Translations under genes and position numbers: made by a program
Notes under the pieces: model-generated
Seen by the model: the letters and a program-made list of their open reading frames with translations, nothing else
Database searches by the model: none
What the model was told of the DNA's origin: nothing
Shown here: positions 43,932 to 54,910 of the stretch, piece after piece
Position numbering within the stretch: position 1 is the first letter of the stretch
Layout of the letters: every line of letters begins with the position of its first letter
Virus record (IMG/VR): IMGVR_UViG_3300034104_005687
Location: 248,001-312,000 of that record
Direction: 5' to 3' (one strand)
DNA: 64,000 nucleotides

Positions 43932-44410
43932 GAGCACAAGAGTTTGTAGGCGAAAAAGTTTCTCCAGAAACTGCACAAGACGGTTTTCTTGATCAGCAGC
44001 TGGTCAACAACGGAGAATGGACAATCAAAGCCACGGGCGATACACGACGCTATGGTGACACAGTTGCCAATGTGTTGCATGTAAAGGTGTTTGATACCAA
44101 CACCAATGAAGAACTGGCCTGGGTCGATTTTCTTGTAAAAACTCGTAGAGAAGATGGAGAGCGATACATGGAGTCAGCATACACTTATGTAAATCCTCGA
44201 TACCGCGGCAAGGGACTGGCCAAGTTAATGTATCAGTATGCCAATAGCTTGGGCAACGACATTCAACCAAGTCAAATGCAAACTGACATGGGCAAAGGTA
44301 TGTGGAAAGGACTCAACAAGGCTGTGAAACAACCTCCTTTGCTGCCTACTGTGTCTGTGCCCGAGAAACCGCCCAGTGTGTGGCAGCGTTTGCGAAAGGC
44401 CGTGGTATGA
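43928..44410 (+). CDS. GNAT-family acetyltransferase with MRAxEF leader
   Basis: Acetyl-CoA motif A 'YVNPRYRGKGLAKLMY' and 'QTDMGKGMW'; starts MRAQEFVGE. Confidence 0.8.
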   Translation: MRAQEFVGEKVSPETAQDGFLDQQLVNNGEWTIKATGDTRRYGDTVANVLHVKVFDTNTNEELAWVDFLVKTRREDGERYMESAYTYVNPRYRGKGLAKLMYQYANSLGNDIQPSQMQTDMGKGMWKGLNKAVKQPPLLPTVSVPEKPPSVWQRLRKAVV

Positions 44411-44955
44411 GAGCAAATGAATTTACACAACCACGGGCTGCTGGCTGTATAATAGTAGCTGAGGACACAGGTCGTTGGTGTTTACAGCAACGCAGTGACA
44501 CAGTGAGTGATCCTGGCCTGTGGTCAACCTGGGGTGGCGGCTGTGAACTAGGAGAAACACTGGAACAATGTGTGCGTAGAGAGCTGGCAGAAGAAGGTGG
44601 ATATGTAGGCCCACTCCAGTTGGAACCACTCAGCAGCAACAGTCAGTATGCCACCTTTATTGGTCGTGTGCCACATGAATTTGAACCCAAAATCAATCGT
44701 GAATCAAAAGACTGGTGCTGGTGTGAGTCAGATCAACTGCCTGAACCCATGCATCCAGGACTTGCACAAGCGTTGAGTGAAAACTTTGCTGACGGCAAAG
44801 TAAAAGGAAAAAGCAGACCTGGGCGTGTAAAACGTGCAGGTGCCAGCTGCAATGGAAGTGTAACAGATCTAAGAGCAAGAGCCAAACGTGCATCAGGAGA
44901 AAGAGCCCGTATGTACCACTGGTGTGCCAACATGAAATCAGGACGTAAAAAATAA
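44407..44955 (+). CDS. Nudix hydrolase with MRAxEF leader and a basic C-terminal module
   Basis: Nudix box 'GGCELGETLEQCVRRELAEEGG'; ATG 44407 is coupled to the previous stop. Confidence 0.85.
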   Translation: MRANEFTQPRAAGCIIVAEDTGRWCLQQRSDTVSDPGLWSTWGGGCELGETLEQCVRRELAEEGGYVGPLQLEPLSSNSQYATFIGRVPHEFEPKINRESKDWCWCESDQLPEPMHPGLAQALSENFADGKVKGKSRPGRVKRAGASCNGSVTDLRARAKRASGERARMYHWCANMKSGRKK

Positions 44956-44999
44956 GAGGCGGTCTCCTGTAACTTAAACTTATTTCAAAAACAAACAGC

Positions 45000-45445
45000 A
45001 CAAGGTTGGCGGGCCGAATATAATACCGCTGGTGAATCCGCTCTGATGTGTGGCGGTAGCCAATTCTGTCCGCTGTTAACAGGCTTCTGTTCTCTACCCC
45101 TGTGCCGCAGGGATGCCCAGAGAAAACGTCTGCCCTGTGGCAGTAGCGTTAGAACAGTCGTACGGGTTGAGCGTAGCGCAAGCTAGCTTATTGTCAGATA
45201 CTGTCATAGATCCAATTGACACCGAGGGATCTTTAAAAGTCGTAGCAGGTAGGGTAAGGTACAGAGCCCAGAACAGTAGACAACACAAATACCTGCTGTC
45301 ATAAGTGTGGCTGAGCAACTCAGCGAATGTCTTGGCGCCCTGTTTCAGGGTGTCGTATGGCGTCACAATCTAGCGAAATATCTCTTGTGTATTTGTATAA
45401 ACAAAGCGAGCTGACAAGCGAAGCTTAGGATTGCGTAGCAATCCG
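45000..45445 (+). ncRNA. Unidentified, highly structured non-coding element (candidate large ncRNA and/or ssDNA structure)
   Basis: Core of the longest gap in the window (44956-45466), with at least nine readable stems, some with G-U pairs and GCAA loops. Confidence 0.6.
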
Positions 45446-45466
45446 ATCAGACTAAATACAAATACT

Positions 45467-46597
45467 ATGCTATTCAACGAACTCTTTAACTCTAGCCCTG
45501 AACCCCTTGCTGAGGGTGTATTGGATAACCCTGGGCAAGAACACAGCCCGGTTGCGTCTGCTATTATTCGTCGTATCTTGCTACAGCGTACAGACTTATT
45601 GAGCAAGTACGGTCCTGAGCGAGTGGGTGCAGCAGTTGACGATGTTGCTGACTTTGTGGGTGACACGGACGAAATTGGCAGTAGCGATGTATCCGGTTGG
45701 GTTCGCCAAGTTGAACAGATGTTGGGCAACATGACAGAAGCTGGATACAAGCGTGATGCGTATCAAAGAGATTACGACAATAGTGTTGCAGGCATGAGCA
45801 AACGTGACTCTTACGCCTACAGTCAAGACGGTGGTGGCAACGATGAACGCCACGATCTAGATCCCACTGAGTGGTACATTGTCAAAGATGGCAAAATGTT
45901 CAAAGCAACTGTGTATCCTACCCAAGTACAGTCAGCAATGTCACAGGGCTTTAGTCCCAGCAGAGAAGAAGCCAAAGCCAGAGCTGACCAGCAAGGTGTG
46001 GCGGAAGGCTCAGATTTTTTTGCAGGTAGCAAATTTGCCGACGAAGATGGCAATACATTTAGTGTAGAAAAAATAATAGCCTTTGCCAAAAAAAATCCAA
46101 AATATTTTCATAAAGATTTTCCATTATCAAAAATAAAACATGATCTTTCATGGTGGCAAGGAAATAAAGAAAGAATGATGAATGCTGATACAAGTTTTCC
46201 ACTGTTAGTAATTCAAAATGATGATGGACATCTTGGTGTTGCTGATGGGCTTAATCGCATGAAAAAAGCAGTTGATGTTGAGAAGAAAACAACTATTGAT
46301 GTTTATCTAGTTCCAAAAAAAGATATTATGAAGTTCTCTGAAAAGCAAGGTGTGGCGGAAGGTGATATCGGTCAGTTAGAAAAAGATATTGCTGCTGCAC
46401 CAGTTGAGCCTATTGCCAACATGGAAGGCTCCAACGAAAAGATTGGCAATATGGATGCTGATGCGTTTGATTCTGCCATGGCACGCCTTAAAAAGCTAGC
46501 AGGTGCAGGGCCAATGAAAACTGTGTGGGATCCTACCAAACGTGTTTACCGCAACATGCCCACAGCAGTTCAACCTCCTCAACAGCCCAAAAAATGA
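45467..46597 (+). CDS. Modular putative internal head protein with a ParB-like cassette
   Basis: CTAAATA upstream; 'MLFNELF...LAE'; 'FPLLVIQNDDGHLGVADGLNRMKKA' lies between two QGVAEG repeats. Confidence 0.65.
   Translation: MLFNELFNSSPEPLAEGVLDNPGQEHSPVASAIIRRILLQRTDLLSKYGPERVGAAVDDVADFVGDTDEIGSSDVSGWVRQVEQMLGNMTEAGYKRDAYQRDYDNSVAGMSKRDSYAYSQDGGGNDERHDLDPTEWYIVKDGKMFKATVYPTQVQSAMSQGFSPSREEAKARADQQGVAEGSDFFAGSKFADEDGNTFSVEKIIAFAKKNPKYFHKDFPLSKIKHDLSWWQGNKERMMNADTSFPLLVIQNDDGHLGVADGLNRMKKAVDVEKKTTIDVYLVPKKDIMKFSEKQGVAEGDIGQLEKDIAAAPVEPIANMEGSNEKIGNMDADAFDSAMARLKKLAGAGPMKTVWDPTKRVYRNMPTAVQPPQQPKK
45990..46008 (+). repeat. 19-bp repeat AGCAAGGTGTGGCGGAAGG, copy 3
   Basis: Exact match. Confidence 0.95.
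46344..46362 (+). repeat. 19-bp repeat AGCAAGGTGTGGCGGAAGG, copy 4
   Basis: 354 bp (118 codons) after copy 3. Confidence 0.95.
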
Positions 46598-54580: not shown

Positions 54581-54597
54581 ATACCCTCAACAGAGGC

Positions 54598-54626
54598 TTG
54601 ACTTCGGCCGCTGTTTCATTTATACT
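54598..54626 (+). promoter_or_regulatory. Sigma70-type promoter for the replication genes
   Basis: TTGACT-17 nt-TATACT. Confidence 0.7.
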
Positions 54627-54649
54627 AGTGTTTTAAACAGGAGTATTGT

Positions 54650-54910
54650 ATGGAACAAAAAACATTCAACGGTGAACAAAAGATCAAACTGATTCAAATC
54701 ATCAACGAAGGTATGCAGGTCACTCAAGAAATTGAAACTCTAACCGGCGGCCTCAATGACACCATCAAGGCTGTGGCCGAAGAACTGGAAATCAAACCAG
54801 GTGTACTGAAAAAAGCCATCAAGCTGGCACACAAGGCCGAATTTGGCAAAGCCAAACAAGACCACGAACTGCTGGAAACAATTTTAGAAACTGTTGGCAA
54901 GACCTTATAA
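54650..54910 (+). CDS. Small helical dsDNA-binding-like protein (T4 DsbA/GapR-like)
   Basis: 86 aa, coiled-coil, 'IKAVAEELEIKPGVLKKAIKLAHK'; AGGAG RBS. Confidence 0.5.
   Translation: MEQKTFNGEQKIKLIQIINEGMQVTQEIETLTGGLNDTIKAVAEELEIKPGVLKKAIKLAHKAEFGKAKQDHELLETILETVGKTL

What the first reader, a model, noticed from the sequence alone, without database searches (positions are those of the whole stretch)
44956..45466. ~470-nt orphan structured non-coding element among the head-protein genes
Seen: this is the longest gene-free stretch in the window and is packed with stems: GGTTGGC/GCCAATT (45004-10/45059-65); CCGC/GCGG; CTGTTCT/AGAACAG (45087-93/45151-57) enclosing the CCCTGT/GCAGGG and CTGCC/GGCAG hairpins; TAGC-GCAA-GCTA; AGATCC/GGATCT; AGCAGGTA/TACCTGCT (45244-51/45290-97) enclosing GGGTAAGGTACAGAGCCC; GCTGA-GCAAC-TCAGC; and GGCGCCCTG/CAGGGTGTC with G-U pairs. 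The near-repeat CAACTCAGCGAA / CAATCTAGCGAA (45316, 45366) flanks the last hairpin. G-U pairs and a GCAA tetraloop favour a + strand RNA. I cannot match it to tRNA, tmRNA, RNase P or group I/II intron cores. Inference: an undescribed large phage ncRNA (ribozyme, scaffold or nuclease-associated RNA).
Basis: partly seen in the sequence, partly recalled or inferred. Interest (0 to 1): 0.82.

Follow-up and report, generated by a model that had tools for sequence, protein, structure and literature searches.

The report
Large structured RNA gene in phages
The gap holds a stand-alone gene for an intricately folded non-coding RNA of about 460 nt, one member of a large, uncatalogued RNA family carried by uncultivated aquatic T4-like and jumbo phages; its function is unknown, but its 3' part has a very unusual pair of co-evolving identical sequences.

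Summary
The element is real and lies on the + strand.

**Family.** Window 44956-45466 carries one copy of an RNA found in at least 142 distinct loci, from IMG/VR phage contigs, lake and marine metagenomes and a few MAG contigs. The 91 unique full-length sequences have a median pairwise identity of 62%.

**Structure.** About 60 base pairs show compensatory double changes. They define roughly 14 helices, at least two pseudoknots and an invariant core.

**Transcription signals.** Many members have a family-specific extended -10 promoter upstream. Most have a conserved two-hairpin 3' end.

**Known families.** Rfam 15 gives no match. ARAGORN finds nothing at the element, INPHARED isolate phages give no hit, and I found no paper describing it.

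**Neighbours.** They vary, with no fixed protein partner and no reverse transcriptase. The gene often lies beside phage tRNA arrays or a permuted tmRNA, on the same strand.

**The oddest feature.** Two 6-9-nt segments 50-68 nt apart are always identical to each other, yet differ between lineages (at least 14 variants). Nothing inside the RNA is complementary to them. One hairpin loop is complementary to both repeat units.

**Best reading.** This is a new class of trans-acting structured phage RNA that presents a lineage-specific sequence twice to an external strand. That mechanism is inferred, not shown.

The parts
44410..44955 (+). Upstream gene: NUDIX hydrolase with a widespread 60-aa C-terminal module. 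It is a neighbour, not part of the RNA.
   Evidence: Pfam NUDIX 1.4e-18, PHROG 1198. The same neighbour occurs in only about 12-18 related loci.
44968..44975 (+). Promoter-like extended -10 (TGTAACTT) of the window's clade. The inferred transcript start is near 44982.
   Evidence: The box is conserved as T(G/A)TAACTT in clade relatives. In other clades the position holds TGTATAAT or TGTATACT, often after a CCAA..TTGG palindrome. The motif TTGG-N5-9-TRTATAMT has 33 hits in 1.0 Mb of loci, and 29 of them lie within 120 nt upstream of the element on its strand. The generic sigma-70 scan of the window found nothing.
44996..45169 (+). 5' domain. P1 (44996-99/45166-69) closes a multi-helix junction. 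Inside are the small pseudoknot 45004-06/45013-15; P2 45008-12/45026-30; P3 45031-33/45059-61 with inner 45038-41/45053-56; P4 45066-69/45079-82; P5 45084, 45087-93/45151-57, 45160; P6 45098-102/45108-112; P7 45125-28/45147-50; and P8 45130-34/45139-43.
   Evidence: RNAalifold, MI/APC and pair tables. P2, P3, P4, P5 and P8 have double changes in every pair, and P6 in 4 of 5. 88-98% of cells are canonical except P8 (70%) and the inner P3 stem (74%), against 10-65% when partners are slid by 1-2 positions. P1, the small pseudoknot and P7 are mostly invariant. There is an extra long-range pair, 45117-45165 (C-G 67, U-A 22).
45170..45188 (+). P9: an optional hairpin with a GNRA loop (GCAA here).
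   Evidence: It is present with compensatory stem changes and GCAA/GUGA/GCGA/GUAA loops in about two thirds of A2 rows, and deleted in the rest.
45194..45300 (+). Pseudoknotted core: P10 45200-05/45271-77 (plus 45194/45282 and 45195/45279); P11 45208-13/45227-32 with loop GACACC at 45218-23; the invariant strand UUAAAAnUCG at 45233-42; P13 45244-51/45290-97, which crosses P10; and the near-invariant GGGUAAGGUACAGAGCCCAGA at 45252-72 (possible P12 45252-55/45266-69).
   Evidence: P10 has 8 of 8, P11 6 of 6 and P13 5 of 8 pairs with double changes. MI values reach 1.4. Invariant columns are listed; the two search patterns came from this region, so its invariance is partly by construction.
45296..45333 (+). 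3' repeat unit 1: UGUC (45297-300, complementary to the P11 loop), GUGUGGC, the small hairpin GAG-CAA-CUC, then variable segment X1 (AGCGAA, 45322-27).
   Evidence: P11 loop with 45297-300: 90% canonical, with coordinated changes in at least 5 lineages. X1 equals X2 in 92-99% of sequences per column.
45334..45354 (+). P14 hairpin (45334-42/45346-54). Its 5' strand repeats the P11-loop sequence. Its 3' strand (GGUGUC 45349-54) is also complementary to the P11 loop.
   Evidence: 5 of 9 pairs have double changes and there are many G.U pairs. The alternative pairing 45218-23/45349-54 is 96% canonical. 45220-45352 and 45219-45353 covary.
45349..45386 (+). 3' repeat unit 2: (GG)UGUC, GUAUGGC, CAAUCU, then variable segment X2 (AGCGAA, 45372-77).
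   Evidence: Identity covariation with unit 1 at 45298/99 = 45352/53 and 45322-26 = 45372-76. X variants are listed.
45404..45444 (+). Conserved 3' end. Hairpin A (45404-07/45423-26) has the loop motif GAGYG..ARCGWA (45408-22; tandem G.A pairs are possible). Hairpin B (45428-44) is terminator-like.
   Evidence: Both are present after an A/U-rich linker in most of the 91 members and in the second subtype. A U-run follows hairpin B in many relatives but not in the window.
45467..46597 (+). Downstream gene: a modular 376-aa protein. It is a neighbour, not part of the RNA.
   Evidence: Only PHROG 17560 matches, and its function is unknown. Relatives have other genes here, some on the opposite strand.

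Best explanation
Window ~44982-45445 (+ strand) is a stand-alone gene for a non-coding RNA of about 460 nt. It belongs to a large, previously uncatalogued family carried by uncultivated aquatic T4-like and jumbo phages.

**Shown.** The family exists. It has a conserved multi-helix, pseudoknotted fold with an invariant core. The + strand is the RNA strand. A family-specific promoter-like box lies upstream and a conserved two-hairpin 3' end lies downstream. Gene neighbours vary. The gene is recurrently placed beside phage tRNA/tmRNA genes.

**Inferred mechanism (about 0.3 on its own).** The RNA acts in trans as a folded machine or scaffold. Its 3' domain carries two tandem arms. Each arm has a docking sequence (UGUC) for the same hairpin loop (the P11 loop) and the same lineage-specific 6-9-nt single-stranded sequence X. 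X has no partner inside the RNA, yet both copies always change together. I therefore read X as a recognition sequence that base-pairs with an external strand. The two arms would exchange on the P11 loop: state 1 is P11 loop with unit 1 plus hairpin P14; state 2 is P11 loop with unit 2, with P14 opened. Either copy could then be presented in the same place in the core.
For: **Family and fold**
- Homologues were found stepwise. There are 173 loci with hits, 142 distinct.
- 91 unique full-length sequences have median identity 62%.
- 37 of 58 RNAalifold pairs have double changes. P2, P3, P4, P5, P6, P8, P10, P11, P13 and P14 are supported in the 91-sequence alignment, and canonical pairing collapses when partners are slid.
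- G.U 439 against A.C 103.

**Stand-alone gene**
- The promoter motif is almost exclusive to the element: 29 of 33 hits in 1.0 Mb.
- The 3' hairpins are conserved.
- Flanking genes differ and can lie on the opposite strand.

**Not a known family.** Rfam gives none. ARAGORN reports nothing overlapping the element in the window or in 58 related loci.

**Arms**
- Identity covariation of X1 and X2 involves at least 14 variants.
- No internal or local complement exists.
- The P11 loop is complementary to both units, with coordinated changes in at least 5 lineages.

**tRNA/tmRNA neighbourhood.** They occur in 28 of 142 loci, and the nearest one is on the same strand in 24. A permuted tmRNA lies within 11-65 nt in three distinct loci (L120, L219, L322).
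Against:
- No target for X was found. Its complement is not enriched in the window or in the fetched loci.
- The two-state exchange is inferred from sequence only. Both cis pairings can form at once, so switching is not required by the data.
- In the second subtype the X-equivalent (ACAAUG) does not vary, so the rule cannot be tested there.
- The window's own promoter box is a weak -10 (TAACTT), and hairpin B lacks a U-run here.
- The alignments are MAFFT-based, and no phylogeny-aware test (R-scape) was run.
Confidence: 0.6

Rival explanations
1. Template RNA with terminal direct repeats. A polymerase (a reverse transcriptase or other) copies from X2 towards X1 and stops at the small hairpin abutting X1. 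The nascent 3' end, complementary to X1, then re-anneals on the identical X2. This gives reiterative copying of a 50-68-nt unit, as in telomerase translocation or DRT2 template jumping.
For: - It is the one model here that needs no separately encoded partner: X1 must equal X2, X may drift freely, and no complement need exist in the genome.
- Identity stops sharply at the 5' edge of X (CUC against UCU).
- Unit 1, but not unit 2, has a GAG-CAA-CUC hairpin right at that edge.
- Phage RT-ncRNA systems and DRT2 are described in the literature.
Against: - None of the roughly 20 largest neighbour clusters that I annotated is a reverse transcriptase or other polymerase. The prokaryotic RT-ncRNA systems I know of (retrons, DRT2, UG27; DRT2 and UG27 as described) have the ncRNA next to the RT.
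- Concatemers of the unit have no more open frames than shuffles.
- The 'template' would contain a stable hairpin that is selected at the RNA level (G.U pairs).
Confidence: 0.13
2. Self-processing ribozyme. The two repeat units are two reaction sites docked in turn on the same guide loop (P11 loop, like an EBS or IGS). The result is excision or rearrangement of the 50-68-nt segment that contains P14.
For: - The RNA has a compact pseudoknotted core with invariant nucleotides.
- One loop is complementary to the same tetranucleotide upstream of both sites, with coordinated changes.
- Its size and complexity are typical of large ribozymes.
Against: - X varies freely and has no guide partner, so the RNA itself does not read X.
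- No similarity to group I, group II or RNase P models.
- No genomic variants lack the segment.
- No RNA data are available.
Confidence: 0.1
3. RNA-only quaternary assembly like ROOL or GOLLD. The surplus complementarities (P11 loop with two partners, P14 strand exchange) would be intermolecular contacts that build an oligomer or cage, perhaps linked to phage tRNAs.
For: - ROOL and GOLLD are large phage or prophage RNAs, often near tRNA islands, of unknown function, and their intermolecular contacts show up as covariation.
- This RNA shares the phage origin, the tRNA/tmRNA neighbourhood and the lack of a protein partner.
Against: - No sequence or model similarity to ROOL or GOLLD.
- It is smaller (about 460 nt).
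- Identity covariation of X is not explained by symmetric contacts.
Confidence: 0.1
4. Cis-regulatory leader (riboswitch-like 5' UTR) of the downstream gene 45467-46597, or 3' UTR of the NUDIX gene.
For: It lies directly between two + strand genes in the window. P14 and the P11 loop form a possible two-state switch.
Against: - Neighbours differ among 142 loci.
- In L036 both flanking ORFs are on the opposite strand.
- It has its own promoter box and a terminator-like end.
- At about 460 nt it is larger than any riboswitch class I know of.
Confidence: 0.03
5. Highly divergent member of a known RNA (RNase P RNA, tmRNA, group I or II intron), or a DNA-level element (origin, homing site, decayed gene).
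For: - It sits beside tRNA/tmRNA genes.
- By my recollection of E. coli M1 RNA (not checked with a tool), it has short resemblances to RNase P RNA: AAAGUC before a long-range helix, and CUAGAUGAAU in one clade.
- A GIY-YIG endonuclease ORF is adjacent in 10 loci.
Against: - No Rfam hit even at E<=10.
- No tRNA-like domain.
- The helix order does not fit the P3-P8-P7 topology of group I or the P4 topology of RNase P.
- Compensatory changes and the G.U bias show selection on RNA, not on DNA or protein.
- Stop-free stretches in homologues reach only a median of 63-65 aa of about 140 possible.
Confidence: 0.04

Closest known systems
ROOL and GOLLD RNAs (Rfam RF03087, RF01998)
   Same: Both are large, ornate, protein-partner-less RNAs of phages and prophages, often placed near tRNA islands, with function unknown. 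This RNA is also phage-borne, is often next to tRNA arrays or tmRNA on the same strand, and has multiple pseudoknots.
   Different: No sequence or covariance-model similarity. It is about 460 nt against about 600-800 nt, with a different helix layout. Its tandem arms with identity-covarying segments have no counterpart that I know of in ROOL or GOLLD. Oligomerisation was not tested.
Telomerase RNA / DRT2-type template ncRNAs
   Same: Two identical short sequences bound a segment, change together between lineages and have no complementary partner in the RNA. A helix abuts the 5' repeat, like a template boundary element. A pseudoknot lies nearby.
   Different: No reverse transcriptase is encoded nearby. 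The bounded segment holds a stable conserved hairpin. There is no hidden repeat ORF. Phages of this type have no telomeres. The resemblance is functional speculation only.
Group II intron EBS1-IBS1 and group I IGS guide pairing
   Same: A hairpin loop (P11 loop) pairs with a short sequence upstream of a conserved site, and covaries like a guide.
   Different: The guide has two equivalent targets within the same RNA. There is no domain 5, no P3-P7 topology and no flanking exons. Rfam intron models do not match.
Bacterial RNase P RNA and tmRNA
   Same: Similar size (350-450 nt), pseudoknots, and co-location with tRNA/tmRNA genes in phage 'RNA islands'.
   Different: No CR-I/CR-V P4 core and no tRNA-like domain or tag reading frame at the element. 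Rfam and ARAGORN are negative there, while the true permuted tmRNA next door is detected easily.

Membership tests
Any Rfam 15 family (4227 models, including RNase P, tmRNA, group I/II introns, GOLLD, ROOL, HEARO, OLE, raiA, T-box) | A covariance-model match at or near the family's gathering score. | tested here: not met
   There are no gathering hits in the 64-kb window. At E<=10 over 44800-45600 there are only four chance-level hits of 14-18 bits to unrelated small families. Nothing lies at the element in 12 related loci at E<=5, although tmRNA and tRNA beside it are found.
tmRNA | A tRNA-like domain (T arm and acceptor stem ending in CCA) plus a tag reading frame. | tested here: not met
   ARAGORN finds no tRNA or tmRNA in the window, and none overlapping the element in 58 related loci, while it finds permuted tmRNAs next to it.
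Group I intron | A P3-P8-P7 pseudoknot order, and insertion in a host gene with exon continuity. | tested here: not met
   The order here is P10 5', P11 hairpin, P13 5', P12, P10 3', P13 3'. The element is not inserted in a continuous gene: flanking ORFs are unrelated and vary. A G-binding site was not examined.
Group II intron | A domain 5 hairpin with the AGC triad, and a six-domain layout. | tested here: not met
   The Rfam group II models give no hit, and no D5-like hairpin appears among the conserved helices.
Bacterial RNase P RNA | The CR-I/CR-V P4 helix enclosing the specificity domain, and a J15/16 site for CCA. | tested here: not met
   The Rfam RNase P models give no hit. The only long-range helix preceded by AAAGUC (P13) encloses about 38 nt, not a specificity domain. 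Catalysis cannot be tested here.
T-box leader | A specifier codon plus an invariant UGGN bulge that pairs with tRNA NCCA, located upstream of an aminoacyl-tRNA-related gene. | tested here: not met
   The UGGC in the repeat units is not conserved (UGAC, UGAG, CUGC and others occur). Downstream genes are unrelated. X varies over 6-9 nt, not 3.
RT-associated template ncRNA (retron msr/msd, DRT2, UG27) | An adjacent reverse transcriptase gene. | tested here: not met
   Proteins within 3.5 kb in 142 loci were clustered. The roughly 20 largest clusters I annotated are NUDIX, CHASE2 cyclase, desaturase, AhpC, CMD, GIY-YIG, gp46/47-like, baseplate and DUFs. Distant RT genes in complete genomes were not examined.
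RT-associated template ncRNA (retron msr/msd, DRT2, UG27) | Identical short repeats at the two template ends that allow the product to re-anneal. | tested here: met
   X1 equals X2 in 92-99% of sequences per column, with at least 14 variants and no internal complement. This is a resemblance in logic, not evidence of copying.
ROOL/GOLLD-type ornate phage RNAs (a functional kind, not a homology family) | A large, complex-fold RNA of phages, near tRNA islands, without a protein partner. | tested here: met
   Phage contigs. tRNA or tmRNA within the locus in 28 of 142 loci. No conserved neighbouring protein.
ROOL/GOLLD-type ornate phage RNAs (a functional kind, not a homology family) | Homo-oligomeric cage assembly. 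| not testable with these tools
   This needs native gels or cryo-EM of the transcript.

The most novel reading that the evidence does not exclude
This is a new natural RNA machine: either a new large ribozyme, or an RNA whose two identity-locked segments serve reiterative templating or guide a reaction on an external nucleic acid. It is encoded by abundant aquatic T4-like and jumbo phages next to their tRNA/tmRNA genes.
Probability: 0.3. Interest if true: 0.95.

Novelty: categorically new. Interest (0 to 1): 0.85.

Why it matters
Large RNAs with complex folds are rare. In bacteria and phages only about a dozen classes are known, and several of them (RNase P, group I and II introns, tmRNA, the HEARO/omega RNAs) proved to be enzymes or guides.

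This one is widespread. It has no protein partner in cis and sits in the phage translation-RNA neighbourhood.

It also shows covariation of identity rather than of complementarity. I know of no such pattern reported for a bacterial or phage RNA. That pattern points to interaction with an external or nascent strand.

It gives a concrete, testable object: a defined gene, promoter, fold and mutable X segments. It can be used to ask what ornate phage RNAs do, a question still open for ROOL and GOLLD.

Tried and rejected
- **Known families.** Rfam at gathering and E-value thresholds on the window and on 12 loci gave nothing at the element. ARAGORN gave nothing overlapping the element.
- **Isolate phages.** megablast and blastn of the region, of a relative and of the 44-nt core against INPHARED gave no true hit. 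The whole Melnitz genome and the cyclase regions of Melnitz-3 and HTVC008M were scanned with nhmmer profiles and gave nothing.
- **Pseudogene or intron in a larger gene.** Relatives of the downstream protein are longer, but their extra parts do not match the region.
- **Coding.** Stop-free stretches in homologues reach only a median of 63-65 aa of about 140 possible. The spacing between X1 and X2 is not a multiple of 3.
- **Hidden repeat ORF.** Concatemers of the X1..X2 unit are no more open than shuffles.
- **Partner for X.** There is no internal complement, no enrichment of X or its complement in the window, and no consistent complement in the fetched loci.
- **X as a codon or anticodon-loop mimic.** The pattern 'triplet + AA' fits, but two further variable nucleotides are also identity-locked, so I dropped the idea. 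The large tRNA arrays checked contain the cognate tRNA for that reading, but arrays that size hold most tRNAs, so this does not discriminate.
- **UGGN as a CCA-binding site.** It is not conserved.
- **DNA-level deletion variants between the repeats.** None appear in four lake runs.
- **Literature.** Six searches or readings found no description. The IMG/VR catalogue of candidate structured RNAs stops at 151 nt.
- **Steps not taken.** I did not build a covariance model, because the full RNA exceeds the practical size limit. I did not send a 540-column structure string to the count of structure pairs; the pair counts were made in scripts instead.
Full report
**Where the window comes from and what flanks the region.**
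The window is part of IMG/VR contig IMGVR_UViG_3300034104_005687, which is 349,369 bp. The same DNA is held by many lake-water metagenome runs. The window carries a T4-type family B DNA polymerase and other large-phage genes.

The region 44956-45466 lies between a NUDIX hydrolase ORF (ends 44955) and a 376-aa ORF of unknown function (starts 45467). Further neighbours are GNAT-like, amidoligase, DUF6492 and PIG-L proteins. None of these is a head protein.

The + strand folds better than dinucleotide shuffles (-165.4 kcal/mol, z -2.46, 1 of 100 shuffles as good). The - strand does not (z -0.75). That alone is weak evidence. The decisive evidence comes from relatives.

**Finding relatives.**
- The region had no DNA match among isolate phages.
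- Loci fetched through the two flanking proteins gave two homologues at 72-73% identity, L034 and L036. L036 sits between two opposite-strand ORFs.
- Their alignment already showed hairpins with different sequences but the same pairing, including a GCAA-to-GUGA tetraloop change.
- Two exact-pattern scans of IMG/VR, using the most conserved stretches, gave 50 and 65 loci. One scan of GTDB genomes gave 7 real members, on short MAG contigs or large contigs of alphaproteobacterial MAGs.
These include marine TARA contigs.
- In total 173 loci have hits and 142 are distinct. The 91 unique full-length sequences have a median pairwise identity of 62%.
- The window has a single copy (E 3e-108 to the family profile).

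**Structure.**
RNAalifold on 36 sequences predicted 58 pairs, 37 of them with compensatory double changes. Mutual information with APC correction on 48 and then 91 sequences recovered the same helices and added long-range ones. A pair-by-pair table gives the following in window coordinates:
- P1 44996-99/45166-69
- a small 5' pseudoknot 45004-06/45013-15
- P2 45008-12/45026-30
- P3 45031-33/45059-61
- P4 45066-69/45079-82
- P5 45087-93/45151-57
- P6 45098-102/45108-112
- P7 45125-28/45147-50
- P8 45130-34/45139-43
- an optional GNRA hairpin, P9
- P10 45200-05/45271-77
- P11 45208-13/45227-32
- P13 45244-51/45290-97, which crosses P10
- P14 45334-42/45346-54

P2, P3, P4, P5, P8, P10 and P11 have double changes in every pair. 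Canonical pairing is 87-98% for most helices (70% for P8, 74% for the inner P3 stem), and drops to 10-65% when partners are slid by one or two positions.

G.U pairs outnumber A.C pairs 439 to 103 in these helices, so the + strand is the RNA.

Invariant single-stranded or untestable nucleotides cluster in CUACC, GAUGCC, UUAAAAnUCG and GGGUAAGGUACAGAGCCCAGA. The last two were used as search patterns, so their invariance is partly by construction.

**Ends of the gene.**
Upstream of the core, many members have TGTATAAT or TGTATACT, often preceded by a CCAA..TTGG palindrome. The window's clade has TGTAACTT at 44968-75.

The motif TTGG-N5-9-TRTATAMT occurs 33 times in 1.0 Mb of fetched loci. Of these, 29 lie within 120 nt upstream of the element on its strand. 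It therefore belongs to this gene and is not a general phage promoter.

Downstream, after an A/U-rich linker, most members share two hairpins. Hairpin A has the loop motif GAGYG..ARCGWA. Hairpin B is GC-rich and is followed by U's in many relatives. In the window these are 45404-26 and 45428-44.

Transcription itself could not be tested. They show the locus intact, with no deletion between the repeats.

**What it is not.**
Rfam 15 has no match at any threshold for the window or for 12 related loci, while the tmRNA and tRNA beside the element in those loci score well. ARAGORN finds no tRNA-like domain.

The helix order does not fit group I introns or RNase P, and there is no domain 5.

Stop-free stretches in homologues reach only a median of 63-65 aa of about 140 possible.

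It is not a leader of the downstream gene, because the neighbours change. The commonest are NUDIX (12-18 loci), a CHASE2 adenylate/guanylate cyclase (12-18), a small holin-like protein, a fatty-acid desaturase, AhpC, CMD, DUF6641, T4 gp46/47-like proteins and a baseplate protein. A SegE-like GIY-YIG endonuclease sits about 100 nt upstream in 10 loci. There is no reverse transcriptase.

The cyclase has homologues in the Kyanoviridae pelagimyophage HTVC008M and the methylophage Melnitz. The Melnitz genome lacks the RNA, and no INPHARED record has its core.

**Neighbourhood of RNA genes.**
In 28 of 142 loci, tRNA or tmRNA genes lie within the fetched stretch, and the nearest is on the same strand in 24.
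- A permuted beta-proteobacterial-type tmRNA ends 58-65 nt upstream in L120 and L322, and one starts 11 nt downstream in L219 (L116 and L140 hold the same arrangement as L120). It has its own terminator, so the two are separate transcription units.
- Arrays of 17-23 tRNAs follow 2-5 kb downstream in L121, L212 and L286.
- An amber-suppressor tRNA is close in four loci.

This is the same kind of neighbourhood reported for ROOL and GOLLD.

**The unusual 3' domain.**
Two stretches of about 37 nt are similar to each other: unit 1 at 45296-45333 and unit 2 at 45349-45386. Each contains UGUC, GURUGGC, CAA, a pyrimidine triplet and then a segment X.

X1 (45322-27) and X2 (45372-77) are identical to each other in 92-99% of sequences per column. 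X itself differs between lineages. Variants include AGCGAA, AGCAAA, AACAAA, AACGAA, AGAUGAA, GGAUGAA, ACAUGAA, GUAUGAA, GCAUGAA, GUAAGAA, AGAUGAG, AAGAGAA and ACAUAAU, plus GGUUCAAGU in a divergent MAG member.

Nothing in the RNA or in the fetched loci is complementary to X. X is not enriched in the window.

A second identity relation links 45298/99 with 45352/53. The P11 loop (GACACC, 45218-23) is complementary to the UGUC of both units. The 5' strand of P14 repeats the P11-loop sequence. All four elements changed together in at least five lineages: GACAC/GUGUC, GGCAC/GUGCC, GAAGC/GCUUC, GUCAC/GUGAC, UUCGC/GCGAA and GGAAC/GUUCC.

Both cis pairings can form at once (P11 loop with unit 1, and hairpin P14). 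The linked identity, however, only makes sense if the cross pairings also matter: P11 loop with unit 2, and P14 5' strand with unit 1. That could happen in a second conformation or between molecules.

Unit 1 has a small GAG-CAA-CUC hairpin abutting X1. Unit 2 has none.

One locus has the 3' module duplicated again. A second subtype has an inserted hairpin and a constant ACAAUG in place of X, but keeps the core, both units and the hairpin A motif.

**How it most likely works.**
*Shown:* this is a conserved, independently signalled, highly structured RNA gene.

*Inferred:* it acts in trans. X varies freely, is locked to a second copy and has no internal partner. I therefore read X as a sequence that meets an external complementary strand, with the two arms exchangeable on the P11 loop so that either copy occupies the same place in the core.

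I give this general picture about 0.3. Within it, two concrete versions remain:
- *A trans target bound by two identical seeds.* No target was found.
- *A template whose end repeats let a nascent copy re-anneal, as in telomerase or DRT2.* This explains the free drift of X and the hairpin at X1 best. It lacks any nearby polymerase gene and shows no hidden ORF.

A self-processing ribozyme and a ROOL/GOLLD-like RNA-only assembly are the other live rivals. None can be settled without RNA data or bench work.

**Novelty.**
No Rfam family, no isolate phage and no paper in the searchable library describes it. The large IMG/VR catalogue of candidate structured RNAs only holds motifs up to 151 nt and could at most contain fragments.

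I therefore rate it as a new RNA class. It belongs to the same ecological kind as ROOL and GOLLD, but is unrelated to them in sequence and layout.

Noticed in passing
window 44773-44952: The last ~60 aa of the NUDIX ORF (ending ..MYHWCANMKSGRKK) form a separate module. It occurs in more than 592 IMG/VR stretches at about 85-92% identity, often on otherwise unrelated ORFs. It has no Pfam match.
   Followed up: partly
window 45467-46597: The downstream 376-aa protein is modular. Its segments recur in shuffled order inside 250-900-aa ORFs of related phages. Lake metagenome contigs show forms that skip about 330 nt at 46008-46342.
   Followed up: partly
L116:2967-3385 (also L120, L140, L322, L219, L139, L285): Related phage contigs encode a permuted, beta-proteobacterial-type two-piece tmRNA (Rfam RF01850 at 122 bits, RF04321 at 115 bits). 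It often lies directly beside the new RNA gene, with its own terminator.
   Followed up: partly
L155:3855-3928, L165:3364-3438, L171:8093-8167, L288: Amber-suppressor-type tRNA genes (anticodon CUA) lie 1-4 kb from the RNA gene in four related contigs. This hints at TAG recoding in those phages.
   Followed up: no
L173:3457-3885 and 9 other loci: A SegE-like GIY-YIG homing endonuclease ORF (Pfam PF19835, 7.6e-32) sits about 100 nt upstream of the RNA gene on the same strand. The conserved RNA gene may be its homing target.
   Followed up: no
5' leaders of many relatives, e.g. L139, L116, L217: Three repeats of (U/A)AGGC(A/U)C, spaced about 11 nt apart, lie between the promoter box and the RNA core. 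They are absent from the window's clade.
   Followed up: no
L170 (minus strand, ~200-700) compared with L176: The 3' module of the RNA (unit 2 plus the hairpin A region, about 85 nt) is tandemly duplicated in one contig and single in its close relative.
   Followed up: no
window 54590-54908: A good sigma-70-type promoter (TTGACT, 17 nt, TATACT) lies ahead of an 86-aa ORF, in what mechanical ORF lists show as another gap of about 520 nt.
   Followed up: no
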